From Anolis carolinensis (Eukaryota): 64,000 bases of DNA. The first letter of the stretch is position 1, and every line of letters begins with the position of its first letter. A model generated the notes under the pieces. The model saw only the letters and a list, made by a program, of their open reading frames with translations, had not been told where the DNA came from and did no database searches. Positions 13,543 through 36,367 of the stretch are shown here, one piece after another. The DNA is taken from contig NC_085844.1 of the NCBI RefSeq assembly GCF_035594765.1, forward strand, positions 137,656,107 through 137,720,106, read 5' to 3'. The translations under genes were made by a program, and so were the position numbers.

Positions 13543-15955
13543 ATGGAGCCTGACGATCCTGTCGATGCCTTGGTCGCTCGCTATAACAGTGAGTTGTCCA
13601 GGGCAATAGACATGATCGCCCCCAAACGTCCCCTCTCGCTACGTGGAGTTGCCCCAGCCCCCTGGTTTACTGGGGAGCTGGCGGAGATGAAACGTGCGAG
13701 GAGGAGACTAGAGTGCCGCTGGCGGACAACTCGTGATGCATCTGACCGAGCACAGTCTAGAGCCGCTATTAGGGCCTATTCCGCGGCGTTGCGGGCAACC
13801 AGGAAGGCTTTCTCGACTGCCCGCATCACGTCTGCAACAACTAGATCCTCAGAGCTGTTTCGGGTTGTTGGGGAGCTCCTCCACCCTCCTCAGGCTGGGG
13901 GGGGCACCTGACATCCCGGCAACTCGGTGTAGCGAGTTTGCTCACCATTTTGCAGACAAAGTCGCTCAGATTCGTTCCGACTTAGATGCTGACCTTGTTG
14001 CAATGCCAGGTGAGGTAACCGAGGCTTCTGTCTGTTCGATCTTGTGGGATTCGTTTCAGCTTGTGCAGCCTGATAATGTGGACAAGATTCTTGGAGCGGT
14101 GAGGGCGACCACCTGTGCCCTTGACCCTTGCCCATCTTGGCTTTTAAAACAGGCCAGTGGTGGGTTGGTTGATTGGTTTGTGAGAATAATTAATGCCTCT
14201 TTGGAGCAGGGTAGATTTCCATCTAATCTAAAACAAGCGGTGGTGAGACCTATCTTAAAGAAGGCCTCCCTAGATTCGACCAACTCGCATAACTACATAC
14301 CAATCTCCAACCTTCCATTTTTGGGCAAGGTCTTGGAGCGGATGGTTGCCTCTCAGCTCCAGGGATTCTTGGATGATACGGATTTTCTGGACCAATCGCA
14401 GTCTGGCTTCAGGCCTGGTTTCAGTACCGAGACGGCTTTGGTCACCTTGGTGGATGACCTCCGCAGAGAGCTGGACAGGGGGAGTGTGACCCTGCTGGTT
14501 CTCTTGGATATCTCAGTGGCTTTCGATACCATCGACCATGGTATCCTTCTGGGACGTCTCTCCGGGATGGGCCTTGGGGGTACTGTTCTGCAGTGGCTCC
14601 AGTCCTTCCTAGAGGGGCGTTCCCAGATGGTGAAGCTGGGGGACACCTGCTCGGACCCCTGGCCATTGTCCTGTGGGGTCCCGCAAGGTTCTATTCTGTC
14701 CCCCATGCTTTTCAATATCTACATGAAACTGCTGGGCGAGGTCATCCGGGGTTTCGGAGTTCGGTGCCATCTCTACGCGGATGACACCCAACTCTATTTT
14801 CCACCAAAATCCAAGGAAGCCCCTCGGATACTGGATCAGTGTCTGGCCGCTGTGTTGGCCTGGATGAGGGCGAACAAGCTGAGACTTAATCCTGATAAGA
14901 CAGAGGTCCTCCAGGTCAGTCGAAAGTCCGATCGGGGTATTGGGTGGCAACCTGTGCTTGACGGGGTCACACTGCCCCTGAAGGCGCAGGTCCGCAGCTT
15001 GGGGGTCCTCCTGGATTCGGGGCTGACGCTTGAGGTTCAGGTGTCAGCCGTGGCCGGGAGGGCCTTTGCACAATTAAAATTTGTGCGCCAGCTGCGACCA
15101 TACCTCGAGAAGTCTGATCTGACCATGGTGGTCCACGCCTTAGTTACCTCTAGACTGGATTATTGCAATGCGCTCTACGTGGGGCTGCCTTTGAAGACGG
15201 TCCGGAAACTACAATTAGTTCAACGCATGGCAGCCAGGTTTCTAACTGGAGCAAATTACAGGGCACGTTCAACGCCTCTGTTTAAGGAGCTCCACTTCCT
15301 GCCGCTTACTTTCCAAGCCCAATTCAAGGTGCAGGTTCTTACCTACAAAGCCCTAAACGGTTTGGGACCCGCCTACCTTAGAGACCGCATTTCCCCCTAT
15401 GAACCTGCACGATCTCTTCGCTCGTCGGGGGAGGCCCTCCTCTCGCTCCCACCACCCTTGCAGGCGCGGTTGGTGGGGACGAGAGAGAGGGCCTTCTCTG
15501 TCGTGACCCCCCAGCTTTGGAACCTGCTCCCTAGGGAGATTAGGGTGGCCCCCACCCTCCTCTCCTTCCGGAAGAATCTGAAAACCTGGCTTTTCCGGAA
15601 AGCCTTTGATGAGTGACTTTTGTTGGTTTAAGATGCCTGCCTATGTAATAATAGACCCACTGATCTGCCCTTTTATTGTCACTATTGTCATTTATAGTAC
15701 TTCATTGACTATCTCAATTATGTAACTATCTCCTCCCTATTTGACACATTCACCTTTCGGCCCAGACTTGTGTTTGATATACCTGTTTTAACATTTTATC
15801 TTGTAAGATTGTCCTTTTCGATTGTTTTACCGATATTGTTGATTTATTGTTGTAAATTTGTGTTTTTGTTTTGATTTTATATTGTGATGTTGGGCAAGGC
15901 CCCATGTGAGCCGCCCCGAGTCCCTTCGGGGAGATGGGGCGGGGTACAAGAATAA

Positions 15956-16016
<61 letters not shown>
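13543..16016 (+). mobile_element. 5'-truncated L2-clade LINE with RT ORF (13733-15616) and (TTA)n tail
   Basis: PISNLPFLGKVLER, QSGFRPGFSTET, LLDISVAFDTIDH, GVPQGSILSP and YADD motifs; 3' stem-loop gagtcccttcggggagat; frameshift at the G-run near 13896; (TTA)n at about 15957-16016. Confidence 0.93.
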
Positions 16017-16278
16017 GCCTGATGTCGAATTTCATTTCATGTCTAAGAAATTATACTGCCCAAACTGAAGAATAACTAGTGTTCAAACAGCTATAAAAGT
16101 TTAAAGATTATTGAAGTTTTTAATGACATAACTGCAGTTGTTAAAAGTTGGGATAGAGCTGGAAGTATTCTGTTAAATGTAATGGCAATTCACTTTTTTT
16201 AGGTTCAGTTGGTTAAACACAGCTTTATCAAAGGATCTTCTGTAGTTAAAATTCAACTTTTAGCTTTTACTTATAAAT

Positions 16279-16450
16279 GCTAAACAGCGTAAGTCTTGGT
16301 TAGTACTTGGGTGGGAAACATTAATGAATATAAGGTACTATAGCTATATTCCTGATGGGGGTAACTGGCAAAACCACCTCTGAGTATTCCTTAACTAAGA
16401 CAGATCCCATGAAAACCATCAGTTGACAAGCGATATGAAAGCACATAGAC
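16279..16450 (+). mobile_element. Decayed 5S rRNA-derived SINE (5S-Sauria/SINE3-like)
   Basis: gctaaacag...tggttagtacttgggtggga...gaata resembles the 5S rRNA internal promoter region; followed by an actggcaaaaccacctc tail. Confidence 0.65.
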
Positions 16451-18879
16451 ACATTGAAGCAGCATTGTGAAAATGCAAAATTTAATCATCTGGTAGTGCT
16501 TGGTGGCACAATTACATTTTCTCTTTTATATTTTCCAAAATCTCCCTTCCCTTGGTTATTTAATTCTTCTTCCCAGTCTGATGGAGCTTACTGAGAAAGT
16601 CAGTAGTGAAAATCTTCATGGTTCAGATTTCAATCCAAGCAAAACTGGTATGCAAATAAATGTAAATCGTTTTTTAAATCTTGGTGTCCAAATTGACAAT
16701 GCCCTTAATTCAGCACTGTGATACAGTTTAGTAGAATAAGTATAATCTGCCAGACTAATAGAACAATTGAAGCTGTGGGTTACCATATTTCACCACGTAA
16801 TAGTTGCCACTGCATAATCATCACATCCCTCCTTTCCAGTCTAAAAAATTGTTTCTTGCCTTTCCTTGCTTAATGGTTGCATTAATCCTCCTCCCCTCTC
16901 AGAGGTACATAATTTTTGAAAACCAAATAAACCGAACTGGCTGGGGCTCTTCCTCTTTCCTTCTTGGAGGTAACACAGTTTTTAAAAAAACAGCCAGCTG
17001 GGGCTCTCCCCCTTCCTTCCTCTCATCTTAGAAAAAATGCAACATGTGCAAAAAAGAGGCGTTAAAATGCAACAATTCTATGGTGAAATGCGAGATTTTG
17101 TTTGAGTACAATTGCCACAAAATTATCCTATACCTTCACATAGTTATGTAATATTGCTAGTACCATTGCACCGTTTTAAGTACTACAACACTATCAGGAA
17201 GAATGGAGAAATTGGGCTGAAATGAATTCCTTTGCTTAAATAAAATGTACTGCTATTCCATGTCTGCAAGACTGAATGTTTGGCAAACAGATTAAAAAGG
17301 GACTTTAAAGCACCAACAGACAGACAGTGCAAGCCATTACTACAGTAAGGATAGATAGATAACCGTTGTGCTCTCAGACCCCTTACAGGTACTCTGCTTC
17401 TGGATTCCAGACACACACATGCACCAGGAGCCTCAACGCCACTGTCGCAACTGGGGATTGAAAGACAAGGCTTACCGCATAGGTAATTGGGGTGGGGTTG
17501 GGGAGCAATAGATTTACGGGGTGGGGGCATCTATACAGATGATGAGTCCTGTACACCCAAGATGTGCTAATCAGAAACACCCATAGCTAAAGGATTTTAC
17601 TACTGCACCTCTGGAAAAGCCCCAAACTATACTGTTTGAGTAGATTCTGTAGCAATGTCTTCTATGAATAAGAGATAAGGTATGCATAGTATGTGCACTA
17701 GGGAAGCTTCCTTTTGGCAAGAATTGGGCCCAAGGCTCACTGCACTTATAACACACATTGGGAAAACTAATGGAAACCATATAACTGCCTTTATTGAAAA
17801 GCAAGCACTTGTTGTTAGCAAACTGCTGTTATATATTCTTTATCTTGCAGAATCAGAACCAGGAGATACTACAGCAGAACAGAAACAGGAGAGGGAATTG
17901 CCATGCAGTTCACAACATTTGATGAGTGAGTATTCGATCTGGTACAGCACTTATCTCTCCAGATGTGTAGTGGAAGGCTAACAGGTGAGTGCATTATTTG
18001 GGAGAGCAGGGAGGCTGACTGAGATGCGTGTAATGCAGTGTCCTTCAGTAAGGCATCCTCCTTCATCAATGCTTCTTAATTTGGTTCACATCTAATATCT
18101 GCATTTACAGTAGACTTTGGACATCACTTCCCTATATTTCTTTTCTCTCTCTACAGATAACCCAGCTATCATCAAGCATGCACAGAAGCAAGGCTGTTCC
18201 CCACATGCCATAGTATGCAGGTCACAAGATAGGTCTACAGATTCACCAGCCACCAGTGAGAAGCCAATTATTTGTATATCAGCTGCCACCATTTTGTTCT
18301 GTAGGGTTTCTATGTTTTTGAAAGTTTCATAACAGGCAGAGAGACAACACTACGTAGGGTTGGAGAAAATGGTGCTTGTTATGCTTATACCTGCCATGCA
18401 ACTGTCTACCATACTGGAATTCCTCAAGAACAAACAATGTGGCAGTTCCTAGACTGTGGTGTTGCCAGAACTCATTCTACAACTGATATTGATTAATAAA
18501 AGTAGTGCTTGTTTCACTTTTCTTACATTGGTTAGCAGATGAGGAACACTGATCTAAACATCTTAATAGGGCAGGTCATGGAAGGATTCTCCACTACAAC
18601 AACGGTTGATAATCTGTGTGGCTTTTCTTTTTTATAAATATATTATCTTTTATACCATTATTAAATATTTTAAAATTCCAAAACATTCTTATACCCCCCA
18701 ACCATCCCATTACTTACATAGCATTATAAAAATACAGCATTGTCAATTCTGTTTCTTTTATGTTATTCTGCTTTTATTTGTTACATATAATTATTGTAAA
18801 GTGTATTAATTGCTCAACCACCATCTTTCTTGGACATTTGGTGATTTAAATTCACCATTGCTTTTACACATGAAGCTAA

Positions 18880-19300
18880 TAAATGGTTTCTAAGTTCTGT
18901 CAAATAGATCTTTCAGTTCTCCTTTTGCTAACCTTATTTTATGAGTTAACTTTTCCCATAGAGCTGTCACCCATATCTTGTTTAACCAATCCTTTATTGT
19001 CCAATTCTCGTAACTTTTTCCAGGTTTTCATTATTTCGAGTCTTGCGACACATAACATGAGCAGTATAAGATTTTTATTTACCAGATACTTCTTCCTTTT
19101 GAACACAGAAATCACTAACAGAACTCCCTTGAAATGCACTTCTTCTCCCACTATTTGGCCTATCCGTGATAGAGCTTCGTTCCAGAATTTCTGTGTTTTT
19201 TACCCAAATCTGGTTTCAGTCCCTTATCTCTCTGCACTTTCTCCAATATAGTTTAAGGATTCTGTTATTAAATCTATGTACTAGTTTGAGTGGATAATAG
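18880..19300 (-). mobile_element. Decayed L1-like ORF2 3' fragment
   Basis: Minus-strand LILLMLCVARLEIMKTWK resembles the L1 ORF2 C-terminus; the minus strand is A-rich. Confidence 0.45.
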
Positions 19301-20993
19301 TACCACCTATGCAATATTTTCAGAGAATTTTCTCCCAGTTGTGCTGAGATTGATTTATATGCTTGAGTTTCCCAAATTGAGTTCCATTGTTTCTCTTCTA
19401 TTTTTAACCCTAAATCTGATTCCCATGCTAATCTATATGGCCTTTCAAGGGTTGATCATCTGCTCTTCATGGCCTTTCAGTTATAGCACCAGCAGGAGTA
19501 AGGGAGGGTTCCTAACAGTTCAATATAATTTCCCTTTCTTCTTCACTTGCTGCCAGTGTATTTTCCTTCTACATCTCCTTACCAACCACAGGAAGACAGT
19601 GTGACTCAATCCCCTTGACATATCCACTGAGCTTTTTGGCTAGTGTGGTTTTATTAGTCTTCCCTCTTCCCTTGGTGGGGGCTGATGTAGGCAATGTACA
19701 GACTTCAGCTGAAAGAAGCTATCTCAGGTTATTACTCCCATACTCAGTATATCAGAATTAACTGGACGGTGGTGGTATAAATAGCCTGTCGTGGGGGTCG
19801 AAATGATTTGAGAGTTTCCATGAGATAAATTGGGTTCACAAACCAGTATAATTCTCTAAACCAAAGAGAATGGGAGCTGAAATGCTGCAATGTGTAATAA
19901 TTAAGCATGGAATGAAATTAATTGTCTGACAGATACGAATTGGGAATTTACCTGAATCATACTCTAGGTTTATGCCAACCAGTTATAGTGAAAATATAGT
20001 TATTGCTAGAAGCAAAGGGTTGTCTTTGTGTGTTAGCAACTATATCTCTGTAATCAGAGGTGGAAAATGAATCCACAACTGCTAACATACTTTTCTAACC
20101 GAATTATCAACCACACACAGTACTGACTTCTGCAAACCTTTCAGAAAAATAATATTCGTCCTCCTTTGTGTGGGGAGTAGACCCTTTTCAATGGAACAGG
20201 TCACATACTAGTTCCTATTCTTTTTGCAGTTACGTGCACATGTTTTTTATGAGATACCTAGTACTGCAAGAAGTCTGTAACCAGTTTCTTTGGCGGTTTG
20301 TTATGTCTGGGATCTGTGTGCACGCCTCTTTCCCCTGACCGTTAAATGGCTAACAGATCAGTATACCCTTCCTTCATTTCCTGTTCAGTTATGGCTGTTT
20401 CTCTGAGAAAATATTTTTGAATGCTTCTGCATTTGAGTTATCTAGGGGCCTTGAGCCATTCTGAGTTTTGTCCTGAAGATACCAGTTGCTACCCTTATAT
20501 CTACAGAGCTATGCCAAACTATGATGAAGGAACCCTACAATACACATGTTTGTATTTTGTGTGTGTATTCTGTTCTAGTGTCACGGAATCTTTGCCGTTA
20601 CTATATGTTGCTCTTATTTTCTGCGTACAAACAAGTGGAAGAGGGAACATAAGCACTGGCACAGTAGAATTACCACATGGACTGTTCCATATCTTTTAAA
20701 GATGAAAAAAGAAAACAAGATTTAGAGACCTAAGATAAATAAGAAATTGTATTGCTGAATCATAATTCTTTTTAGACATTGGTGACTAATGAAACTGACT
20801 AGAGAGACCTATTTCATGTATTAAGTTTTTTTAGACTTCTGCTTGTTTTTTGACATGAAGTATCCTAACCTAAGATTTTTTATTTAGCACCCATTAAATG
20901 ATATCTGCTGTTTAATATTTGTTTGAATTTTTAAAACTGATCTAATAGTATTCTTGTCTCCTCCCCCAATTTTCTGAAACAAAATCTTTATAG

Positions 20994-21091
20994 AATCCCA
21001 TGCAAACGTCAAGAGGGAGAATGGAGTCAAAGAATTCACAGATACAAAAGAAGTACCACATACTGAAGAACATCTTTTAGATTTTAATATG
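20994..21091 (+). CDS. KIAA0232: KIAA0232 penultimate coding exon (ESHANVKRENG...EEHLLDFNM)
   Basis: ctttatag|AA acceptor and ATG|gtaagt donor; 98 nt, phase 1 to 0; matches human ECYTNAKGE...EERLLDFNR. Confidence 0.9.
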
Positions 21092-21900
21092 GTAAGTTCT
21101 AGCATCTCTTTCTAGCATCCATTACATCATATCCATCATTACTAGAAGATAACATCTGGAATATATAATTCTTTCTTTTCATTAGTAGTCTATCTCATTC
21201 AAAATCTCATTCCTCTAGTTGCCAAGGGAAGTATTATTGATTTTTGATTTTGACTAGAATTCTTTACATCCCATTGCTTCCTGCTAAAGAATTTGAGATT
21301 CCAAGACTTCTTCAGGGAGAGAAGGAAACTCTTGTTGTAGGTCTTTTGGTAGAGGGAGGGATAGGAAATGTGTTTCCCTGGTGCCCCTTTCCTCTTGTGT
21401 CTCTTTCCCAGAGGTTTTGGCCAAGGTCATGAAGCCCTCTGCATCAGGAATATGAAAATGTACTGATTTGTGGGAGGGTTTTGGCCAAATGCTGCCTTGT
21501 GCCCTCTTCCAGTGCCAGCAGAGTTCTGTTGGAATCAACTCTTTGGCCTAAGTCCATTTGCTAGGCCAAATTCAGACTCATTGAGTTAGTGAGAATTGCA
21601 TGAGAGTTGAATTTCTATTGAACACTGATTCAGCTGGGCTCTGTTTGGGGAATAACAATGGAAATCAAACCTTTGTTTGTAAATTAGGATACTTGCATGG
21701 AAATCTGTTAGTTTGTTTGAATGATTGATCAATATGCAGGGTTTCTTCCAGAACAAAATAACATTAAAACACAGTTGAATAAAAAAAGTTTTAAAAAATG
21801 TAAAATACGTTCATTTCTAATTTTTTTGTATTATTTCTGAACTATAATAACCTTTTCTCTTGCAAAACACTGACATACGTTTTCACATGAAAATCCTTAG

Positions 21901-22077
21901 GTCGCTTCTCTTCATGAAGCAAGATGTGCAGATCCTAATTCTGAAACAAAATCAAATGGTTTTAGGAAGAAGCTATACTCCAGTGATAGCTCCGGGTCTG
22001 AAGGCACAGCATCAGAAGGTGGAAATGGATGGACAGACCCTTGTGAAGAGGAGCTTTTCTCTCGAACTCACCTGTAA
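21901..22077 (+). CDS. KIAA0232: KIAA0232 last coding exon, ending EEELFSRTHL*
   Basis: ccttag|GTC acceptor; stop TAA at 22075-22077; C-terminus matches the recalled human EEELFSRTHL. Confidence 0.95.
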   Translation, partial: VASLHEARCADPNSETKSNGFRKKLYSSDSSGSEGTASEGGNGWTDPCEEELFSRTHL

Positions 22078-24349
22078 AATTAGATGATCTAGGAACAGCA
22101 TGAGATGGGAAACTCTTCTAGAAGGCCTGAAACTCAATACTGAATTGAGTTCCCCCTTCAGTTAATGGATTCAGAAATGTATTTATCTTTCTCTTCTTGA
22201 TATTTTATTTTCAATAGTTGGGATTCTAGTCCCATTGAAGGCTTTTCCCCCTCCCTCCAAAATGTTAGCTCCTTGGCTATTTGGACCTAGAGTAGATTGT
22301 GTTGTCGAATCAAGAATGGATGTGCATGTGATTTGTCTTGGTAGTATCACTGCTATTTTGCATCCTAGCTGCAGTTATTTTTATTTTTAACTGTAGCCCT
22401 ATCAGTATTACTATCTTACTAGCATTGCAGTGTCTACAGCTATTCAGAGATTTTAACTTTCGGCACATTTAGGCTTTTAAGATTTGGGAGATAAATACTT
22501 AACACTGTAATCTATCAGTGCCTTTCTGAATGTGAGAGGAAAGCATGTATGGCTTGTCCTGTCTTTTAAGATCTCATAACATTGGAGTAGGAATACTAGG
22601 GCTGTGCTTTAGAGACTTTCAGAAACTGTGTTTTCTATTCTAAGTTCTCTCCTCTTAACTCATATAAATTAACACAGTTGAAACTATTGTTTGTTACCTT
22701 CTTGCTAGCAGAGATTATTTGCAGGCCTGAAAAAAGAAACACAATTTTCTTTTCCTCCTTGTTTTCAGGGCTTAGTGTTCCATCTTTTTCAGGTTTTAGT
22801 GTTGTAAAATAGATCATTAAACAAATGACACTACAGTCTGGTCCGAAGCACACTTAACTTTAATGGTACATTCTTGCAGGCATGCTTAAGGTTGTATCAT
22901 TAATGCCCCTGGAGAAATTATGAACAGTGAATTTTGTCACAAGCTGCAGAAATTTGACCGAAACTATCTCAGAGTCAACATTCAATATTTTATATGCAGA
23001 AGGTTAGTATATCACCCAAAATCAATCCAGTGGCTCCTGCAGTTAGCTACTATTGTGGTTCTAATTTAGTAAAACTTGTAGCTAACTTTGTGTTCTGAGA
23101 GAATGTTAGGAGTAAGTTGTGTGTTGTGGGTGTGAGTGGGGAAAATGACTTACGTGTGTGATTGCAGTAGTGATTGTTGCTTTATGTGACCTGCTCTTAA
23201 AGTTTATTTTAACATAGTCAATGCATCTGTCAACTTGTAACTGTGCAAGACTATCAATTCCCTGTGCTACTAATGTATTATGCAAATCATAAGAGCCAGG
23301 AGGAGCAATATAGGTTTATACCATTTCATAGTTTTAAAAACTGATCTATACAATAACAGCATGTTTAAGACATCAGAAAGTGCAGAAAGTTTACTGTTGA
23401 TTTGAAAATGCTAAGCCATTAATTTTAATAGGCAAGAAACTCCTAACAATTATAGTTGTTTGAAATGAAAAGCTGAACTGGCTTTCAAGTTTCATTCTGT
23501 GCTAGTTAGCTGAAATGAATTTGAGTTTTGTTGCCTTTTCTTGACTAGTACATGGACGTAAGATCTAGGATATCAGCAACTTCTAAGATTGCATGTATTC
23601 TTTCTGTTGAAACTTTGACTCCAGTGGCTTGGTTTGTACTTTCAAGGGAAATATTATTAACTGCTTTTAAGCTGCATTATTTTAGCTTTCATACAAAAAA
23701 TCTTTCCAGTGTTGGGGTTGTTTGTTTTTTCTTATTTGAGATTCTGGATAGGTTTTTAAATATTTACTTTCTTCTGGAGCTTCCTTAAAAATGTTGTATA
23801 GCACATGCACTGAGAATATTGTCTGTCAACATGAAAGCAAAAAGAACGAAAACTGATGAATTCTAATGGTTTAATCCAACTAGAGTCATTGTTAGAATAA
23901 TGAATGACCAAACGGGAATATTTGGGGGGGAGGGGGACCCACACCTTTTAACCTTGGCTTATTTAGATAGATATCTCAGTGAAAGGATGATTCATTATAT
24001 TATGATTTAATATTTTAACATCTTTAAAAATGTACATGTTACATGTGTGGGCAATAACAAATAATATTTATTTGTTTCATAACTGAATGGATAAAATTCT
24101 GAAGCTTTCCAGTGAGAAGGTTGATGTGTGAGTTTGTGTTTTTGTTTCTCTGCAAGGATAATTTAAAAAGTGGAGATGCTAAAATGCACTGTGGTATGAA
24201 GCGCATTGCATATCCATAGCACTGAAGTATCAGTTTTTCATTCCTGGGCTGAATTTGTTTCTACTTTTTTGCTTCAAGTGGTTGTATTGTTCTGATTTCA
24301 CATACACCAGGGTAACTGAATTTGTTTTTTGTGGAGTTACTAAACACCA

Positions 24350-24355
24350 AATAAA
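24350..24355 (+). terminator. Probable KIAA0232 polyadenylation signal (3' UTR about 2.3 kb)
   Basis: AATAAA followed by a GU/U-rich element (gttgcgttgttttgtgtatg) at the end of a TE-free UTR-like stretch. Confidence 0.6.
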
Positions 24356-24823
24356 AGATAAAAGGACAGTTGCGTTGTTTTGTGTATGTTTTATCATACA
24401 AAATCTACCTTTAACGCAGCATTGACATAGATTTCATCCACCTAGTATGCTGAAGAACACAAAGCCCTGCTATCAAAGGATACTATTGCCAATACTTATT
24501 TATATTGGTGCACCAAGTACAGCCTTTCCTGTACCAAGATAACCTAGTGATAGTAGTCTAGGCACTAGTAACCTGCACATTAGACTACTGTAGTGTGCTC
24601 TATGTGGGACTGCCTTTGAAGATGACTTAGACGCTGAAGTTAGTGCAAAATGCAGCAGCTCAACTGCTGGCTGGAATACCATATAGGCAGCATATTGTGC
24701 TGATATTAAAAGAATTACACCGACTGCAGTACATTTCCAGTCAACATTCAAAGTGCCTGTGAGGACATTTAAAGCCCCAAGCCCTTGATACTTGAGGAAC
24801 ACCTCTTCCCATATGTGCCTGCC

Positions 24824-25092
24824 GGAGCCCCCAGATGGCGTAGTGGACTAAGTGACTTGAAGGTTGGGTTGCTGACCTGAAAGCTGCCAGGTTCGAATCC
24901 CACCCGGGGAGAGCATGGATGAGCTCCCTCTATCAGCTCCAGCTCCATGCGGAGACATGAGAGAAGCCTCCCACAAGGATGGTGAAACATCAAAACATCC
25001 GGGCGTCCCCTGGGCAACGTCCTTGCAGACGGCCAATTCTCTCACTCCAGAAGCAACTCCGGTTGCTCCTGACACGAAAAACAAAATACCGG
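24824..25092 (+). mobile_element. tRNA-head SINE (Anolis SINE2/ACASINE2-like) with a Vingi-type 3' end
   Basis: Box A tggcgtagtgg and box B ggttcgaatcc; GACACG-A tail; 12-bp TSD TATGTGCCTGCC at 24812-24823 and 25093-25104. Confidence 0.85.
24950..25044 (+). ncRNA. HDV-like ribozyme fold (probably degenerate) inside the SINE body
   Basis: P1, P2 (TGAGAGAA/TTCTCTCA), P3 (GCC/GGC), P1.1, GGGCAA, P4 (CGTC/GACG) and J4/2 GCCAA occur in HDV order; two P1 mismatches. Confidence 0.65.
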
Positions 25093-27704
25093 TATGTGCC
25101 TGCCCAAAGATCAAAGTCTGATGGTGAGGTGAAGAGGGGGCTTCAGCTTCTCAAGTGAGGCACCCTAACTGGAATGCCCTCCTTCCACTGGAGGTCCAAC
25201 TGGCACCTACACACATCATTTAGGGACCATTAATTCAACCCAAACCTAGTTTTGAAATCTTTCAAATCTTTTTTAATGTTTAGTAAGTGTTTAGCTTATT
25301 TAAATATTTTTAAAACTTTGTTACTTGTTTTATTACTTTTCATAAGCTGCTCAGAGATCTTTAATACAGTATAGGGTAGGGTATAAATATTTTAATACTA
25401 TTGCCTTACCTTGCAAAATAAACATTGCACTGAACTTCTCAGAAGGGATTATCTCTTCAAGTTGGAAAGGAGAAATGAATTAGTCCAAAGCTACAGCTAG
25501 AAGAATGGAGTTCAGACCATAGAGGAACCAGTTGTTTCATCTTCCTTCCTGGCATTTTTTAATCTTCCCACCATCCTGACACATTTACTATACCTTGTGT
25601 TGTGCAGAACTCTGAGGCACAGATACTTCTTGAGAAACGCAAAGTGTCATAGTTCAAAATAATGCAGGGAGAAAAATGCACATTTTCTGATCTGGGGCTG
25701 ACTTCAAAGAACTGCCGCTTCTGGAAGCTTTTCTGTTTGTTGAGACTCGGTAACAACCATCAACCTTCCATTTTTTACAGCAACGGGGAAAGGGGCTGGA
25801 GAGTACACGCAAATCACTAGCAGCATGAGACTGACCTCAATTATTTTTTCAAACTTGGCCAAACTTGATTAAAAGTATATTGTCAGTGTTGTACTTTTAG
25901 GTGACTCTCTTATATTGTCTATATTGACCAGATCGGTAGCCTGAACTGCATCTAATAACTTGAGAAATAAAATGTTTAGGTCTCTGGTGTGGGATGTATA
26001 CTATTCTACATAATTGCTTTTGTTCAATAATCTCAAATTTGTTGGGATGCTGGTGGATTTAGTTCACCTGTTGTTGGGCCCCTCTCAGGGTCCAAACTAC
26101 ATGGACTTCCCAAGATACAGCCCCTCAAGCTGGAAATATCAAAGTACTTCCAACACAGAAATCATACACTGGTTTTGGGCAGTTGGAGGTACAATAGAAT
26201 CATAACTGCTGTTAGAGTGCTGGGCTGTAGTTGACAGAGAAAAAAATCTATCTGCTGAAATCAGGAATAAGATTCAACTATTAGTGCATCCTTCAGTACA
26301 CAAATAATGTCTTTTAATAAGAACAATTTCTTGAAAATAGACTATTTTATAGGTTTTAAAACTTAAAAACTGGTGCCTTCTGTATTGCAACTTGTAGTTT
26401 GGTTGAGCTGATCATTTGGGTGATTACAAGTTTACATGGGAAGCGTGTGCACTTCCCTGACTCCTTTCACCTTACTCATTTCTCTGTAAATAGTTGTAGT
26501 ATATTTAACTTGTGCAGTACTTCTGCACTTAATTCCAAATATATTTGTCTCTGGTGTCTTTATATTTCACAACTTTCAGAATGACTTAGGCTTGAACAAC
26601 CCATGCCCCCCCCCCCCCCCCGGTGTTTGGGACTAACTCCCAGAAGCCCTGGCCAGTGTGCCCAATGGTCAGGAATTCTAGAAGCTGAAGTCCAAAACAC
26701 CTGAAAGGACACAAGTTGCCTAGGTTTTCCTGAATAGTGCATAAATGTTATTTTTATGTGTCTAGGGCAATCAGGTCAGAGAGGGAATATGGTCCAGGTT
26801 CTCTGCATATTTTCATAACACCATCTAATCACCTACAGTTTCAGACACATTTGCTTGGACAAGGATTGTCTCACCTTTCATCTCACTATGCAAAATAAGA
26901 TATGAATGATCAACTCATGTCCATCTTTGTTAAGAGTTGTGTAGCCACTTGTTTTTTAAATCTACATTCCAGGGCTGTGCTAAGATCCATGGTTTTTCCA
27001 AATGTTTTAGCCACGCTAGTAAATTTTTTGAACAGTTCCATTAGTTTCATGTCAAGCCATTTTTGTGCAAGGGAACAGTCTTGGAGGTCAGCATTGTAAC
27101 TGCAAAGGAAGCTGTTTCACTGTAGGTTTCTGTTGCATCTTCCCACACTTTGATTCTCTTTGGAGTTCTACGTTTTGTTGGACAGATTTGTGCTGATCTT
27201 ATTCACTATTTTTTAAATCGGATCTCCATTTCATTCTACTTCTACTGCAATTTTTAAAAAAAGATAAACAAGCAAGATAACCAAATTGTGAACATATGTC
27301 TTGCCAACAATCTTCCCTAAAAAGCAGCTATATTTTCAGAAAGACTGTATACATTTTTCTCCAAAATAAGCAAGAAATAAAATTCTATAGTTTTAAGACT
27401 AAAATACCCCATGCCAGTAAATTACCGATAATATATAGTTTGGTTAAATACTACTGATGGTAGTTAAATTAATTTCCTCCCAATTAGCATTTTCAATATT
27501 ATAACCAACTCTGTCACTTACAGGGGCAATCCAGCAAGAATGTTTCCCTACCATTCCCAGTGCTGCAGTAATTGTCTTCACTAAAAGAAGAATTTTCCCC
27601 TGGAAGACTAAAAGAAAGCATCCATTAACCACTGCTCTACATTTTAACACGGCGAAGTACGCTAACTTCTCTAGAGGATTCAAAAACACAATTCTACTGT
27701 TAAA

Positions 27705-28434
27705 ATAAAAATATAAATAAAAATGTAATCTGTTTGTGAGGACCTCATATCTCCCAAACTACTTCACCGATTGCTACGAAATTTGGACACAACTTAGCAT
27801 TTAAACTGACAAGGGTTTTAAGCTATTCACATGCTTACTATTACAAAGCAGTCACATCTGAGAAAGGTAAAACCATACCCCATAGCAACTGCCAATCAGG
27901 CTCATCCCTTAGCTACCGTCGTAACAGATAGCTCCTCTCCTTAGCAACAGCTAAGCAGTCTCCTCCCTTAGGAACCATCATAGCAGACAGCTCCTCTTAG
28001 CAAAAGTGCTAGCAATGGTCAAGCAGTCTCCTCCCTTTAGCAACTGGCATGGGTGGGGCCACAAGGAACAGCCAGGCCCGCCTCCTTGCCACTCAGTTCG
28101 GCTTGGCGAGTTATGTGAAGCCGAGGAGAGAGCAGAGAAAGAAAGAGATCTGTATCGATCCATCCATCTATGTTTACACTCAGAGGCAATCTTTAGAATT
28201 CTACGGTTTACAACAGGACATGGATTGCTTATCACATGGACAGTAATATGTTCTGTATTCCAGAGTCACCCAACCAGACAATCTTCATATTTGCCTTGAT
28301 TATGAAACCACCACGAATATTGCCTATCCACAATCATTGTGAAATCACATATATCTGAAACCTGGTCTTTCTGCATCCTTTCTTTCCCATTGAACCAGAT
28401 TGGGCCACAGCAACACATGGCTGGATACAGCTAG
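27705..28434 (+). mobile_element. Non-autonomous Helitron
   Basis: 3' GC hairpin (gccacagcaacacatggc) about 10 nt before CTAG|T at 28431-28435; degenerate AT-rich 5' end (tataaataaaaatgtaatc...aaatttggacacaa). Confidence 0.6.
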
Positions 28435-28981
28435 TTCTTTATAAAAAGCATTCTTCCCATATATATATATATATTTATTTGAGTTATTGACATAAATACA
28501 ACAAAAGTGGGGGAACATCAGTTGATTTAGTAGAGAAAGTAAGAATGAGATTTGGAAGAGAAGGGGGAAAAAACCCCACAACCCAGAAAAAGCACCAGGG
28601 GGGTTCTAAAAAATTTGACATAAAAAGCATTCTTAAGACACTATTAAAAGAAGAAGAGGAGGGGGAAATGTATATTATTTACCACAAAGCTTGGTAGAAG
28701 AAAGAAGCCAGGATAGCTCAGAAATGGGTAGTAGAGCAGTACGTCATTGCCTCAAAGAGTTCCTGGGACAGAATCCCCTTTAAAGTTGAATCCACAAAGT
28801 ATGCAATTTATCAGGTTTTTAAAAATAGTTTGGATAGTTCTAAACTAAGTGGATAAGGCTGATTTTACATTAAGGCACAATAATCTCTTGACCATAAATT
28901 CTATCAACAAACAAGTACATGTTAAGAGCTTAGTGCATACTCCCCAAAATCTTGTCTTTTTTACATTTAAACCATAGTAAT

Positions 28982-29527
28982 TTACAATGGTAGAAAAGAT
29001 GTCACCCCTTCGAGTTTCTTTTTGACTCCTTTGCATGAAAGACTGAGTCCAGCATGACGACGCTTCAGTATCTCTAGCCGCTCCTTGAGTGCCTCAGCAG
29101 CATTCACTTTGTTTTCATAGTCCCTCAACAACAGTGAATGCCCAAGTAAACCGCACTTTTGCTGAAGCCTCTCATTGTCCAATCGCAACTTATCCCGAGC
29201 CTGTTTAGTCTTAGTTAGAATCTCTCTCTTTTGCGCCACTAAAGCTTCAACTGCCATTAACTGGGATTTCTGGACTTGATTCTCTGCTTCCACAAACTGC
29301 AGCTTTTCTTTTACTTGAGATATGATTTGTACTGTGTTTGTAATCTTTCTCCGGAGCTTCAAAAGCTCCTCATTGCGTTCTTCAATCTTTTCATTGTAGG
29401 TTTGGTTCTCAATCTTCAATTGCTCAAAGTCTATTAAGTGCAGGCCTTCTGCCAGCTCCTCCTGGGCTTTTAGCTTTGCTTCAAGTTTTTGGATCTTGTG
29501 CTTCAAGTTTATATATTCTAGACGAAC
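28982..29527 (-). CDS. CCDC96: CCDC96/CFAP184 exon 3 (C-terminal coiled coil, DUF4201-type)
   Basis: ttaattctag|GTT CGT CTA GAA acceptor; GLHLIDFEQLKIENQTYNEKIEERNEELLKLR matches CCDC96; 546 nt to the stop. Confidence 0.93.
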   Translation of the reverse strand, partial: VRLEYINLKHKIQKLEAKLKAQEELAEGLHLIDFEQLKIENQTYNEKIEERNEELLKLRRKITNTVQIISQVKEKLQFVEAENQVQKSQLMAVEALVAQKREILTKTKQARDKLRLDNERLQQKCGLLGHSLLLRDYENKVNAAEALKERLEILKRRHAGLSLSCKGVKKKLEGVTSFLPL

Positions 29528-31552: not shown

Positions 31553-32336
31553 CTCGGTCATCTCGTCCTCCTTGGCCTGCTCTCGGACCTGGATCTGGTC
31601 CACCTCCTTCTTGGCAGCCTGCTTGCCACCTAGGCGCCGGCCCATGGTGAAGACAGCCACCTCTTTCTTGGTGGCCTGGCAGGCCTGCCACTCGGCCTGC
31701 ACCTTGCCCAGCTTCTCCTGACAGGAGTTGTGCAGGGCCTCAAGCTGCCTCTGGTACCAGGCGCCCTCGGCCACCTGCTGGGCGCGCAGCTCCTCCAGCA
31801 TGGCCAGGTAGCGGCTGTAGCGCTGCTCTCGGTCAGAGATGTGCTGCTCCAGCTCAGAGGCAGCGGCGGCACGGGGGGCACCCTCCTTACCGCTTCGGCC
31901 CAGTAGCTCAGCCAGCTTGGCCTGAAGCTTGATGTTCTCGTTGCGGAGGCGGCGGCGCTCGGCTTGCAACTGCCAAAACTCCTCGGTCAGCTCCTCCCGG
32001 CGGCGCTGCTCCTCAGCCCGGCGCGCCACCAGCTGCTCCTCGGTCTCCCGCTCTGGCGACAGGGCCTCTGTGCTCTCTGGGGTGGAGCCCGCCGAAGGGC
32101 CGCGAATCTTGTCCAGCTCCCAGAGGCTCTGGCTGATGCGTTGGCCCAGGTCGGCACCCAGCAGGAGCAGGGAAGGCTCCTTGGCCTCACCTTCCGCAAA
32201 GGTTACAGAGGTGGGCAGCTCGGGCTTCGCTGGCTGGGGCAGGAGCAGCGTTGGTGAGGGCTCCTGTGACTCCTCCTCCGCTGCAGGCTGGGACTCTCCC
32301 TTGCCCCCGTCTTTCTCTCCCTCTCCATCTCCTTCT
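31553..32336 (-). CDS. CCDC96: CCDC96/CFAP184 exon 2
   Basis: tttccccctcccccaaaaag|A GAA GGA acceptor and ACC GAG|gtgggt donor; 784 nt, phase 2 to 0; coiled coil with EQRYSRYLAMLEELR and RRLGGKQAA. Confidence 0.88.
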
Positions 32337-33217
32337 CTTTTTGGGGGAGGGGGAAACAGTTTATTATGGTTATGGTACATAATAGAACAACAGATCATAA
32401 CAGATATAACCAAGTAACAATAATTTTGATATATACATGCATATCTACATTAGCCAATCAATTAGTTATTTCTGACATTAAATGCATCTTAATACCAGTA
32501 ACTTAACATAAATCATTTAGTCTTGCTATTTCTACATGTTATCCACTATTTTCAGTCTATACTTTCTTCTCATTTAATTTTTAAATATAAGAGTTCATGA
32601 TAACATTCAAACAATATGCAACATATTACAGACCATACACACAACTGAAACCTCTATCCCCCACAAATTAAAACCTCTTTCCCACAGCTGTGCACTCTTC
32701 TCCATGACTTCCGATGCTGAAGGACTATTTTATTTATTTATTTATTTACTACATTTATACCCCGCCCTCTATGAGCCTTTAAGCTAATTTATCCTTGTTC
32801 ATAGTAATCCTAAATTCCTAATGGAGCTCCTCTATGTTACTGACTCTCCATTCAGATATGCTATGGCCAACTTCTATTTTTACAAAAACTCCTCATTACT
32901 TTTGTTCCTCCTCCTATTGTGTGTGACCATTAGCATATATTCCTGCATTCTTTCTCCCCAACCTTTTTTAGTTAGACTTTTTTCTCCTTTCCAGTCTTTG
33001 GCTATGGTTAATCTTGCCACAGCAAAGCTATATTGGTATATTTCTTTGTCCTTTGGATTATTGGTTTCTCTATGTAAACCTAATATAAACAGCCCTGGGC
33101 TTTTCTTCATCTTATTATGTAACATTTTGTCTACTTAGTTACTTTATCCCAAAATGCTTGTATGGTCTCACAGGTCCACCACATATGGAAGAATGTCCCT
33201 TTCTATTTCCTTCCAGC

Positions 33218-33263
<46 letters not shown>

Positions 33264-33790
33264 TATTTTTATTTTTATATCCCGCTCCCATCTCCTCAAG
33301 GGGACTCGGGGCGGCTCACATGGGGACAAGCTCAGCATCATCAAACATTAAAACAGTCATAATTTATCATTTAAAACAATATAAAACAATAAAAACAACA
33401 TAACAGCATAAAACAGCATAAACATATCCGTTCCTTCAAACCTAAGGGTGAGCGTGTGCAGACTTTATGTGAGACTTGAGAATAATAATATAGGGCGATC
33501 AGGGAAGATTACAAGATTAAAATCAACAAGAGTGAGGGACATTGATAAAGTGCAATAATTGTGACAAGTTAATATCTAACTGGAACTATTCATTCGAAGG
33601 TGCATTAATACAGCCATATTTTAAGGTCCTTATGAAAGGTGGACAAGGAAGGTGCCAATCTGATCTCCCTGGGGAGGGAGTTCCAGAGCCGAGGGGCCAC
33701 CACCAAGAAGGCTCTCTCCTTTGTCCCCACCAACCGCACCTGAGACGGAGGCGGAAACGAGAGAAGGGCCTTCCAGGAGGATCTCAAGGT
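33218..33790 (-). mobile_element. L2 3' end with (TTA)n tail
   Basis: RLVGTKERAFLVVAPRLWNSLPREIRLAP; 3' stem-loop; (AAT)n at 33218-33262 on the + strand. Confidence 0.88.
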
Positions 33791-33965
33791 TTATAGGGGA
33801 GGAGGCAATCACAGAGATAAGCAGGTCCTGAGCCTGCTTATCTCCGCCTGCAAACACCTTATTGTCATTTATCTATTTTTGCCAATGTTGTTGGGGTGAT
33901 ACAGCATCTATAAAACATTTTGTATTGATTCTCCCTAATTGATCCAGATAGCGTAAATTTGAATT

Positions 33966-34511
33966 CTAAACGGTTTGAATCCTGCCTACCTTCGTGAAAA
34001 CATTAGCGCGGACCCTAAGATCTGCCAGGGAGGCCCTTCTGTCGCTCCTGCCACCATCACAAGCACAGTTGGTGGGGATGAGGGAGAGCACCTTCTCAGT
34101 GGTGGCCCCTCGGCTCTGGAACTCCTTCCCCAGGGAGATTAAGCTAGCAGCCACTCTATCCACCTTCTTAATAGTTAGGCCCCTGTCAATGAAAGCTCAT
34201 CCCAAACTGGCCATTACAGTGAGCTCAACATTTTACCCCAGCCCCAGTACTCTTTGCAGAAGCCCATGCCCAGCCCTCTCTGATTTCTGATCCAGCCCAC
34301 GTTTGAGATGTTTGTTTGGATTTACTTTAATTGTTGTTTTTATATTCTGCTGTTTTTAATTGTTTAGATTGTTTACATGTGTATTATGTTTTAAATGATG
34401 TTTTTCGTTCTTAAATTTTGTTACTGGGCTTGGTCCCGTTTGTAAGTCACCCTGAGTCCCTTCGGGAAGATGGTGGCGAGATATAAAAATAAAGTTATTA
34501 TTTATTATTAT
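33966..34511 (+). mobile_element. L2 3' end
   Basis: STFSVVAPRLWNSFPREIKLA; gagtcccttcgggaagatgg stem-loop; short TTA tail. Confidence 0.85.
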
Positions 34512-34822
34512 TCCATAGGTATTCCCAGTTATCCAATTCTGTTGTTATACCTAGATCCTTGTCCCAGGATATTATTATTGTCTTGACTCTATTGTCCTCC
34601 ATGTTGTAAATTAATATATATTTGTATAATCTGGAGATTAACCCTTTGTTTTCCCTTTCCCATATTCTTTCCGATTTTGATTTTTTGGTTGCAAATCCCA
34701 CTCTCACATCTTTTTTATATCTTTCATACAGTTGATGATAGCGAAACCAATAATTAATCTCCAATTCTTTCTGCCCTTTTAATTTCCACTTTTCATTTTC
34801 TCTAATAAGGTATTCTTTATAT

Positions 34823-35784
34823 GGGTTGCTGTGAGTTTTTTGGATTGTATGGCCATGTTCCAGAAGCATTCCCTCCTGACATTTTGCTCACATCTATGGC
34901 AGGCATCCTCAGAGGCTGTGAGGTATACTGGAAACTAAGCAAGGGAGATTTATATATCTGTGGAAGGTCCAGGGGAAAATAAATAACTTGTCTGTTGGAA
35001 GCAAGTGTGGATGTTGTAATTAATCATCTTGATTAGCATTTCAATGGCCTTGAAGTTTCAAGGCCTGGCTGATTCTTGCCTGGGGAAATCCTTTGTTGGG
35101 AGGTGTTAGCTGGCCCTGATTGTTTCATGTCTGGAATTCCCCTGTTTTCTGAGCGTTGTTCTTTATTTACTGTCCTGATTTTGGAGCTTTTTAATACTGG
35201 TAGCCAGATTTTGTTCATTTTTGTGGTTTCCTTCTTTCTGTTGAAATTGTCCACATGCTTCTTGATTTCAATGGCTTCTCTGTGTAGTTTGACATGGTAG
35301 TTGTTTGAGTGGCTCAGCATTTCTGTGTTCTCAAATAATATACCGTATCCAGGTTGGTTCATCAAATGCTCTGCTAAGGCTAACTTCTCTTGTTGGGTTA
35401 GTCAGTAAATAAAGAACAAGACTCTGAACAAGGGAAATGCCAGACATGAAACAATCAGGGCCAGCTAACACCTCCCAGCAAAGGATTCCCCTGAGACAGG
35501 AATCAGCCAGGCCTTGAAACTGCAAGGCCATTAAATGCTAATCAAGGTGATTAATTACAACATTCACACCGGCATCCAACAGACAAGAGTTCTTTCTCCC
35601 ACCCTGAACATTCCACTGATATATAAACCTCACTAGCTTAGTTTCCAACAGACCTCACAAACTCTGAGGTTGCCTGCCATAGATGTGGGCGAAACGTCAG
35701 GGGAGAATGCTTCTGGAACATGGCCATACAGCCCGGAAAATACCCAACAACCCAGTGATTTCGGCCATTAAAGCCTTCGACAAC
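34823..35784. mobile_element. Penelope (Poseidon-like) 3' end with an inverted partial copy
   Basis: GIY-YIG C-terminal remnant (LHREAIEIKKHVDNFNRKKE) on the minus strand; inverted pLTR with hammerhead remnants at both ends. Confidence 0.88.
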
Positions 35785-35870
35785 ATATTTTTATATGTTT
35801 TTGCTCTTAGGGTTAGTCTTGTAAGCGCTTCTAGTGGCCTCAGCCAAAGGAGGGGGGGTTGATTCCATAC

Positions 35871-36367
35871 TTTTTCAGTATTTCTTTCAAAGTTCCCTCT
35901 TCTTCTCCTTCTCCTTCTCCGGCCGGCTTCTCCTCGGGCGGCGCCTCTTCGCTCGGGGCGGCTTCCTCGGGGGGTTTCGGCTCCTCCTCCTTCACCTCCT
36001 CCTCCCCTCTTTCAGGCGCCGGCAGCTCCCCTTTCCCTTCCTGCTCTGGGCCTTCCAGTGCCCCTCCGCCTTCTGGGACTCCCTCCGCCTTTCCTTCCAC
36101 GGCGGCCCCCTCTGCCTCCGCTTCTCCCTCGGCCGCTGGAGGGGGTTCTCCATCCGGGCCCTTTTCCACCGACGCCTCAGGGAGAGCTGCCTCTTGCTCC
36201 TCGGCCGGCGGAGGACTGGCCACCACCACCGCCACAGGCACCTCCGCCTCTGAGGAGGACTCGATAACGGCTTTGGCCTCCTCCGCCTTCTCCTCCTCTT
36301 TCTCCGGCTCGGGCCCAGTCAGAACCGCGGCCTCTCCCTCCGCCGCCGCCGCCTCCACCTCTTCCAT
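35871..36367 (-). CDS. CCDC96: CCDC96/CFAP184 exon 1 (Glu/Ala/Pro-rich N-terminus); full protein about 608 aa
   Basis: ATG at 36367 in a CpG island; 497 nt to the AAAAA|gtatgg donor; phase 2 matches the exon 2 acceptor. Confidence 0.78.

What the first reader, a model, noticed from the sequence alone, without database searches (positions are those of the whole stretch)
32318..35913. Apparent de novo intron gain: an L1 inserted into the CCDC96 coding exon and is spliced out in frame
Seen on the gene strand: (i) a 20-bp direct repeat, GAGAAGGAGAAGAAGAGGGA (35913-35894) and GAGAAGGAGATGGAGAGGGA (32337-32318), flanks the block. (ii) L1 ORF2-like remnants start right after the first copy and run collinearly (PLWLRPLEA, WFRYHQLYERYKKD, ISRLYKYIL, HMWWTC, ARLTIAKDWK). 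(iii) The block ends AATAAA-ctgtttccccctccccc-AAAAA directly before the second copy. (iv) The donor gtatgg is 23 nt inside the L1, and the acceptor AG is the last A of the tail plus the first G of the TSD, with the pyrimidine tract supplied by the L1 end. (v) Splicing retains 23 + 19 = 42 nt, adding TLKEILKKEGDGEG in frame to a low-complexity region. Exons 1 and 2 share CpG-island composition, as if once contiguous, and the downstream frame is intact although the L1 has decayed and gained nested elements. Known: clear intron gains in amniote coding sequence are very rare. Splicing is inferred, and the repeat lies in GA-rich sequence.
Basis: partly seen in the sequence, partly recalled or inferred. 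Interest (0 to 1): 0.92.

Follow-up and report, generated by a model that had tools for sequence, protein, structure and literature searches.

The report
Lizard gene intron born from L1
In the green anole, a jumping gene (an L1 retrotransposon) landed in the middle of a protein-coding exon of the cilia gene CCDC96 and now most likely serves as a new intron, a well-preserved vertebrate example of a known but seldom traceable way that introns are born.

Summary
The anatomy is confirmed; splicing was not observed directly. The window is Anolis carolinensis CCDC96/CFAP184. A 3,556-nt block sits between two 20-nt copies (18/20 identical; no chance equivalent in 3,812 control positions). It is a 5'-truncated, sense-oriented L1 3' end (about 1.4 kb) carrying a nested Penelope-like element and L2 pieces. 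In seven outgroups (six squamates and a turtle) the exon is uninterrupted; an eighth has only an unrelated 46-nt break. The A. sagrei protein lacks the L1 peptide and has one copy of the duplicated peptide. The GT at 35870 and the first AG after the pyrimidine tract share phase 2. RefSeq models from two assemblies already use exactly this junction (a 3,534-nt intron, 14 residues added). Both flanking exons stay under purifying selection. Intron gain by transposon insertion is known (a rice SINE, non-LTR introners, notothenioid fish). I found no report of an L1-made coding intron in an amniote. The scan has unchecked notes on other candidate intron gains in this genome.

The parts
35871..36367 (-). 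CCDC96 coding exon 1 (165 codons + 2 nt); its last 23 nt (35893-35871) are exonised L1 DNA
   Evidence: identical to RefSeq XP_062835584.1 residues 1-165; aligns in one frame to the A. sagrei N-terminus
35894..35913 (-). 5' copy of the 20-nt target-site duplication (exonic)
32337..35870 (-). new intron, GT..AG, 3,534 nt, phase 2
   Evidence: sites and phase; junction used by RefSeq XP_008107282.1 and XP_062835584.1; splicing not observed directly
35790..35893 (-). 5'-truncated start of the L1 (ORF2 C-terminal half); holds the donor at 35870
   Evidence: 40% A; its open frame continues in phase into 34823-34513 across the nested element: 134 codons, no stop
34823..35797 (.). nested Penelope-like element (GIY-YIG-type remnant, inverted terminal parts) flanked by an 8-nt direct repeat
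   Evidence: 79-87% identical to other copies in the window; family name from own knowledge of the peptide motifs, no Pfam hit
34500..34822 (-). L1 ORF2 remnant (103 open codons)
   Evidence: no Pfam, PDB, Atlas or protein-database hit
34012..34512 (.). nested L2-type 3' fragment
   Evidence: matches the L2-type element at window 15429-15973
33851..33990 (-). L1 ORF2 remnant leading up to the Cys motif
   Evidence: matches a Podarcis LINE 3' end in L005: protein z=10.3, DNA z=5.3 against shuffles
33218..33850 (.). second nested L2-type fragment with an (ATT)n tail, opposite in orientation to the first
32790..33217 (-). L1 ORF2 C-terminus remnant (CWK..HMWWTC, ARLTIAKDWK), with stops and frameshifts
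   Evidence: z=4.8 and 7.7 against the Podarcis element; Atlas 0.96 to unnamed chordate clusters, weak
32338..32730 (-). L1 3' UTR: AATAAA at 32365, branch-like sites 34 and 28 nt before the exon, C/T tract, 5-A tail; 108 nt free of AG
   Evidence: lizard L1 3' UTR features in PMC5381506
32318..32337 (-). 3' copy of the target-site duplication; its first G completes the acceptor AG, and the other 19 nt are exonic
31553..32336 (-). CCDC96 exon 2 (formerly the 3' part of exon 1)
   Evidence: dN/dS against outgroups equals that between outgroups
28982..29527 (-). CCDC96 last exon, after the ancestral intron shared with all squamates and the turtle examined
   Evidence: dN/dS 0.12-0.20

Best explanation
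A 5'-truncated L1 inserted in sense orientation into the acidic, low-complexity part of CCDC96 coding exon 1 in the A. carolinensis lineage, and duplicated 20 nt of target. Shown: the repeat, the L1 running from edge to edge, and the absence in outgroups. Inferred: this happened after the split from A. sagrei, judged from its protein only. The allele survived because the spliceosome removes nearly all of the element. A latent GT lies 23 nt into the truncated ORF2, ahead of the first in-frame stop. The element's own 3' end supplies branch-like sites and a C/T tract, and the last A of the tail plus the first G of the target copy make the AG. The retained 23+19=42 nt keep the frame and add 14 residues to a region that tolerates indels. 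The sites and phase are shown; their use is inferred from two RefSeq models and from continued purifying selection. The new intron then took up further transposons neutrally. Unspliced RNA would stop at codon 176 and, having a downstream intron, should be removed by nonsense-mediated decay (inferred).
For: Repeat beyond chance. Continuous exon in Sceloporus, Pogona, Python, Eublepharis, Podarcis, Hemicordylus and Chelonia; Phrynocephalus is continuous from residue 109 across the site. A. sagrei lacks the L1 peptide and has one repeat copy. The block's 5' edge is in frame with the downstream ORF2 once the nested element is set aside. The pieces match a Podarcis LINE 3' end, and composition and 3' UTR match published lizard L1. 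The donor and the first AG are both phase 2. RefSeq XP_008107282.1 and XP_062835584.1 both carry this junction, although another in-frame donor exists. No relaxed selection: 19 changes on the carolinensis branch against 22 on the sagrei branch, and dN/dS like outgroup pairs. Exon 1 aligns to sagrei over its whole length in one frame despite about nine indels.
Against: No RNA reads were seen. RefSeq XP models are predictions and their read support could not be checked. Both sites look suboptimal (AAA|GTATGG, and AAG|A with an A-run before the AG; own knowledge of the consensus, not scored). Six sense AATAAA sites lie in the intron. The UniRef entry G1KA68 models a protein starting inside the L1 instead. 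No A. sagrei DNA was available. No library profile confirms L1.
Confidence: 0.8

Rival explanations
1. The L1 is spliced out, but mainly through other sites, for example the exonic donor at 35995 (phase 0) joined to a phase-0 AG at 32320-32263. This would remove some original coding sequence.
For: These in-frame sites exist, the predicted sites look weak, and the region tolerates deletions.
Against: Both RefSeq builds chose 35871>32336. The downstream AGs have poor pyrimidine tracts, and 32336 is the first AG after a 108-nt gap.
Confidence: 0.07
2. Function is rescued without splicing: a transcript starting in the L1 3' end is translated from the in-frame ATG at 32398 or 32380 and gives a 463-residue protein with the whole coiled-coil part.
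For: In-frame ATGs with no stop before exon 2; the UniRef entry G1KA68 is this model. It would also explain the intact downstream frame.
Against: Exon 1 stays open and colinear with A. sagrei in one frame, which means it is still translated under selection. The CpG-island promoter shared with TADA2B lies upstream of exon 1. The L1 is 5'-truncated and has no promoter.
Confidence: 0.06
3. The insertion and the intron are older than the carolinensis-sagrei split, and A. sagrei either splices differently or its model hides the element. This changes the date and perhaps the original splice sites, not the L1 origin.
For: The nested elements are old. The sagrei protein is also shorter just downstream.
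Against: The sagrei protein has exactly one copy of the duplicated peptide, with the expected neighbours on both sides, and no L1 peptide.
Confidence: 0.08
4. The gene is dead or strongly hypomorphic: transcripts end at an L1 poly(A) signal or are degraded, and the gene models are artefacts of ab initio prediction.
For: Six sense AATAAA sites in the block; a stop ten codons into the intron.
Against: 443 downstream codons are intact while the L1 gathered stops, frameshifts and at least four insertions. There is no excess of changes on the carolinensis branch.
Confidence: 0.03
5. A small intron arose first by another route, such as tandem duplication or break repair, and the L1 later fell into it.
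For: Cannot be formally excluded without intermediate species.
Against: Both target copies are exonic, and the L1 runs from one to the other with no non-L1 intron sequence at either edge.
Confidence: 0.02

Closest known systems
Intron gain by transposon insertion, imprecise type (Yenerall and Zhou 2012, PMC3443670)
   Same: The element carries or completes splice sites near its edges and is removed almost precisely.
   Different: That review's table lists Oryza, Drosophila, Oikopleura and Zea and no vertebrate for this mechanism. There is no AGGT duplication here: the donor is internal to ORF2 and the acceptor is a hybrid of tail and target.
SINE-derived coding intron of rice catalase A, and Alu 'intronization' in human 3' UTRs (PMC2394776)
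   Same: [quoted passage not shown]
   Different: The four human cases are alternative, 3' UTR and Alu-based. This one is an L1, in coding sequence, in sense orientation, and apparently the main form.
Introners, including non-LTR-derived ones (Gozashti et al. 2025, PMC12130899)
   Same: A transposon-derived intron that encodes or co-opts splice signals; about 5% of classified introner families are non-LTR.
   Different: Introners are recognised as multi-copy, recently active families, and the paper notes an apparent lack of recent gain in vertebrates. This is one old, decayed copy.
Transposon-like new introns of notothenioid slc26a2 (PMC12357937)
   Same: A lineage-specific vertebrate coding intron made of repeated DNA.
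   Different: Those are in teleosts and the elements are putative and unclassified. Here the element class, target duplication, tail and the source of each splice signal are legible.
Lizard L1 families (Boissinot and Sookdeo 2016, PMC5381506)
   Same: A-rich ORF2, Cys motif at the C-terminus, short low-GC 3' UTR with C/T tracts, AATAAA and an A tail.
   Different: The family could not be assigned; the second Cys of the motif is not readable.

Membership tests
L1-clade LINE (lizard) | ORF2 C-terminal CX2CX8HX4C motif | tested here: inconclusive
   The first Cys (CWK) and HX4C are present and in order; the spacer is 22 nt against 27 expected, so the second Cys is not readable
L1-clade LINE (lizard) | A-rich sense strand in ORF2 (about 42% A) | tested here: met
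   39-46% A in the four pieces (reference value)
L1-clade LINE (lizard) | Short low-GC 3' UTR with C/T tracts, ending in AATAAA and an A tail | tested here: met
   About 400-500 nt, 31% GC, AATAAA at 32365, C/T tract, 5 A
L1-clade LINE (lizard) | Target-site duplication and 5' truncation | tested here: met
   20 nt, 18/20 identical, beyond chance; begins inside ORF2
L1-clade LINE (lizard) | Reverse transcriptase phylogeny or match to a curated L1 consensus | not testable with these tools
   The RT domain is not in the truncated copy and there is no repeat library; Pfam, PDB and protein searches were blank. The only homologue found is an unannotated Podarcis element
Intron gain by transposon insertion | Intron absent from outgroups | tested here: met
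   Eight outgroup loci; A. sagrei at protein level only
Intron gain by transposon insertion | Intron edges coincide with element edges | tested here: met
   Donor 23 nt inside the 5' edge, acceptor 1 nt beyond the 3' edge
Intron gain by transposon insertion | Removal shown in transcripts | not testable with these tools
Introner | Multi-copy family that created introns at many loci | not testable with these tools
   No second copy of this L1 in the window; no genome-wide search available
Intronization (exon turned intron) | Intron sequence corresponds to exon sequence in outgroups | tested here: not met
   The intron is inserted repeat DNA; outgroup exons have no counterpart

The most novel reading that the evidence does not exclude
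Lizard L1s are predisposed to become introns in the sense orientation, because their 3' ends carry a C/T tract next to the poly(A) signal and tail, so that a target starting with G can complete an acceptor. They would then be a recurrent low-rate source of coding introns in squamates, in effect a vertebrate non-LTR introner.
Probability: 0.2. Interest if true: 0.85.

Novelty: new variant of a known kind. Interest (0 to 1): 0.66.

Why it matters
Where new spliceosomal introns come from in vertebrates is an open question. Gains are counted by the hundreds (PMC12124190), but their source is rarely traceable, and introner surveys note a lack of recent vertebrate gains (PMC12130899). Here the source element, the target duplication, the origin of each splice signal and the 14-residue scar can all be read in an amniote coding exon, with empty-site relatives for comparison. 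That makes intron birth by a LINE directly testable with a minigene and across the anole radiation. It also suggests a sense-strand route, through the pyrimidine tract of the L1 3' end, that differs from the antisense poly(T) route described for mammalian SINEs (PMC2394776).

Tried and rejected
One later look-up used the tool-returned RefSeq id P0088, which includes that exon's translation. The spliced model was searched exon by exon; the joined step was left out, and junction statements rest on phase arithmetic and on RefSeq proteins returned by the tools. A. sagrei DNA is not on record. L1 pieces: blank in Pfam, PDB, the protein database, exact look-up and metagenomes; the Atlas was blank or weak. 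No paper mentions CCDC96 together with Anolis, and searches for L1-made coding introns found none. Rejected: chance GA-rich repeat; ancestral intron; intronization; pseudogene. Splice-site strength was not scored because no model was available. The window has no N runs. No contig taken for human was fetched; some unnamed proteins low in the list may be mammalian and were not used.
Full report
Identity. The minus-strand gene is CCDC96/CFAP184, head to head with TADA2B. Its three exons match RefSeq XP_062835584.1 of Anolis carolinensis exactly, compared exon by exon, so the window is green anole. It has no N runs.

Observation. The two 20-mers are where stated and match at 18/20. GA-richness does not explain them. 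Among 3,812 positions in the same acidic stretch of nine orthologues, adjacent 20-mers never exceeded 13/20, and native tandem repeats appeared only at lags 12 and 15. The pair is also the best of all pairs of exon-1 and exon-2 20-mers. A length of 20 is not a multiple of the 3- or 6-nt period of the coding repeat. The donor GT is at 35870 (phase 2). The acceptor AG at 32338-32337 gives an exon start at 32336, also phase 2. It is the first AG after a 108-nt gap and the only phase-2 AG down to 32260. Branch-like sites lie 34 and 28 nt upstream. The intron is 3,534 nt.

What the block is. About 1.4 kb is one collinear LINE 3' end; the rest is nested elements that match other repeats in the window. 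These are a Penelope-like element of about 970 nt, two L2-type fragments and a short tail at about 32790-32730. The Penelope name is from my own knowledge of the peptide motifs. That element is flanked by an 8-nt direct repeat, and the open frame of the first 100 nt of the block continues in phase into the next L1 piece, giving 134 codons without a stop. So the block begins as ORF2 immediately after the first target copy, and the 23 exonised bases are ORF2 DNA read in another frame. Later pieces match an unannotated LINE 3' end in the Podarcis locus L005 (protein z = 10.3, 4.8 and 7.7 against shuffles), which also ends in a pyrimidine run, AATAAA and an A-rich tail. Published lizard L1s have about 42% A in ORF2, a CX2CX8HX4C motif, and a short low-GC 3' UTR with C/T tracts ending in AATAAA and poly(A) (PMC5381506). 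The block has 39-46% A, CWK and HMWWTC in order with the second Cys unreadable, and a 31% GC 3' UTR. No curated profile confirmed the clade (Atlas weak). L1 therefore rests on these features, and the family is unassigned. In this copy the C/T tract lies after the AATAAA; whether the family has it there was not testable.

Polarity. Sceloporus, Pogona, Python, Eublepharis, Podarcis, Hemicordylus and Chelonia encode the first 297-387 residues without a break, up to the single ancestral intron that the anole also has. Phrynocephalus has only a 46-nt break at residue 105 that bridges a frameshift, and it is continuous across the site. Two unnamed Logan contigs also encode long continuous first exons. 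The gain thus falls on the carolinensis side of that split (inferred from protein only). Both carolinensis assemblies carry it, and the nested copy is 79-87% identical to its relatives, so it is not recent.

Is it spliced? I searched the model exon by exon and left the joined step out. There are four indirect lines. First, RefSeq models from two assemblies (XP_008107282.1, XP_062835584.1) both read ...GTLKEILKKEGDGEG..., the junction predicted here, although an in-frame exonic donor exists at 35995. These are predictions whose read support I could not see. Second, the 443 downstream codons are intact while the L1 gathered stops, frameshifts and at least four insertions. Third, selection is not relaxed: 19 changes polarise to the carolinensis branch and 22 to the sagrei branch, and dN/dS against outgroups is 0.29-0.54 in exon 2 and 0.12-0.20 in exon 3, like pairs of outgroups. 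Fourth, exon 1 aligns to the sagrei N-terminus over its whole length in one frame despite about nine indels. This argues against rescue from the in-frame ATG in the L1 3' UTR, which the UniRef entry G1KA68 models.

Mechanism. Shown: a sense L1 with a target duplication inside a formerly continuous exon; a GT before the first stop; a tract and hybrid AG at the 3' edge; matching phases; 42 nt retained. Inferred: that these sites are used; that unspliced RNA, which stops at codon 176, is removed by nonsense-mediated decay; that the disordered acidic region tolerates 14 extra residues, as its length varies widely among orthologues; and that the tail shortened and the AG-free stretch was kept by selection. 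Confidence is about 0.95 for the insertion history and about 0.8 for this junction being the main product.

Comparison with what is known. Transposon insertion is a recognised route of intron gain, with cases listed in Oryza, Drosophila, Oikopleura and Zea (PMC3443670), a SINE-made coding intron in rice and Alu-made 3' UTR introns in human (PMC2394776), non-LTR introners in non-vertebrate lineages such as the dinoflagellate Amoebophrya (PMC12130899) and transposon-like introns in notothenioid fish (PMC12357937). It works like an introner insertion, but membership is untested because only one copy is known. It is not intronization. I found no paper on an L1-made coding intron in an amniote or on this locus; the library omits most subscription journals.

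Verdict. The intron is already in RefSeq, but its origin appears undescribed. It is a new variant of a known kind, interest 0.66. Unchecked scan notes on other candidate gains in this genome are leads only.

Noticed in passing
window 9138-28981; L005, L006, L007, L008: TBC1D14 lies downstream of CCDC96 in the turtle, but KIAA0232 (DUF4603) is the next called gene in Podarcis, Hemicordylus and Phrynocephalus, and its large exon lies at window 5911-9138. Its absence here looks squamate-wide rather than anole-specific.
   Followed up: partly
L007:10300-10371: The Phrynocephalus CCDC96 model uses a 46-nt 'intron' at residue 105 to bridge a frameshift; probably an assembly or annotation artefact.
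   Followed up: partly
window 32398 and 32380 (-): In-frame ATGs in the L1 3' UTR open directly into exon 2; the UniRef entry G1KA68 starts there. This could give a minor short isoform.
   Followed up: partly
window 13733-16006 (+): An L2-type element with a 627-codon open reverse transcriptase frame; related to the two nested fragments.
   Followed up: partly
window 35893-34513 (-): The 5' part of the L1 ORF2 remnant keeps 134 open codons while the 3' part is broken several times; probably chance, not tested.
   Followed up: no
window 35900 region, residue 156: The two A. carolinensis RefSeq proteins differ at one residue (E or G) inside the 5' target copy, so the copy varies between the two assemblies.
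   Followed up: partly
L005:23130-23904: A related LINE 3' end in a Podarcis KIAA0232 intron, with its pyrimidine run before rather than after AATAAA.
   Followed up: partly
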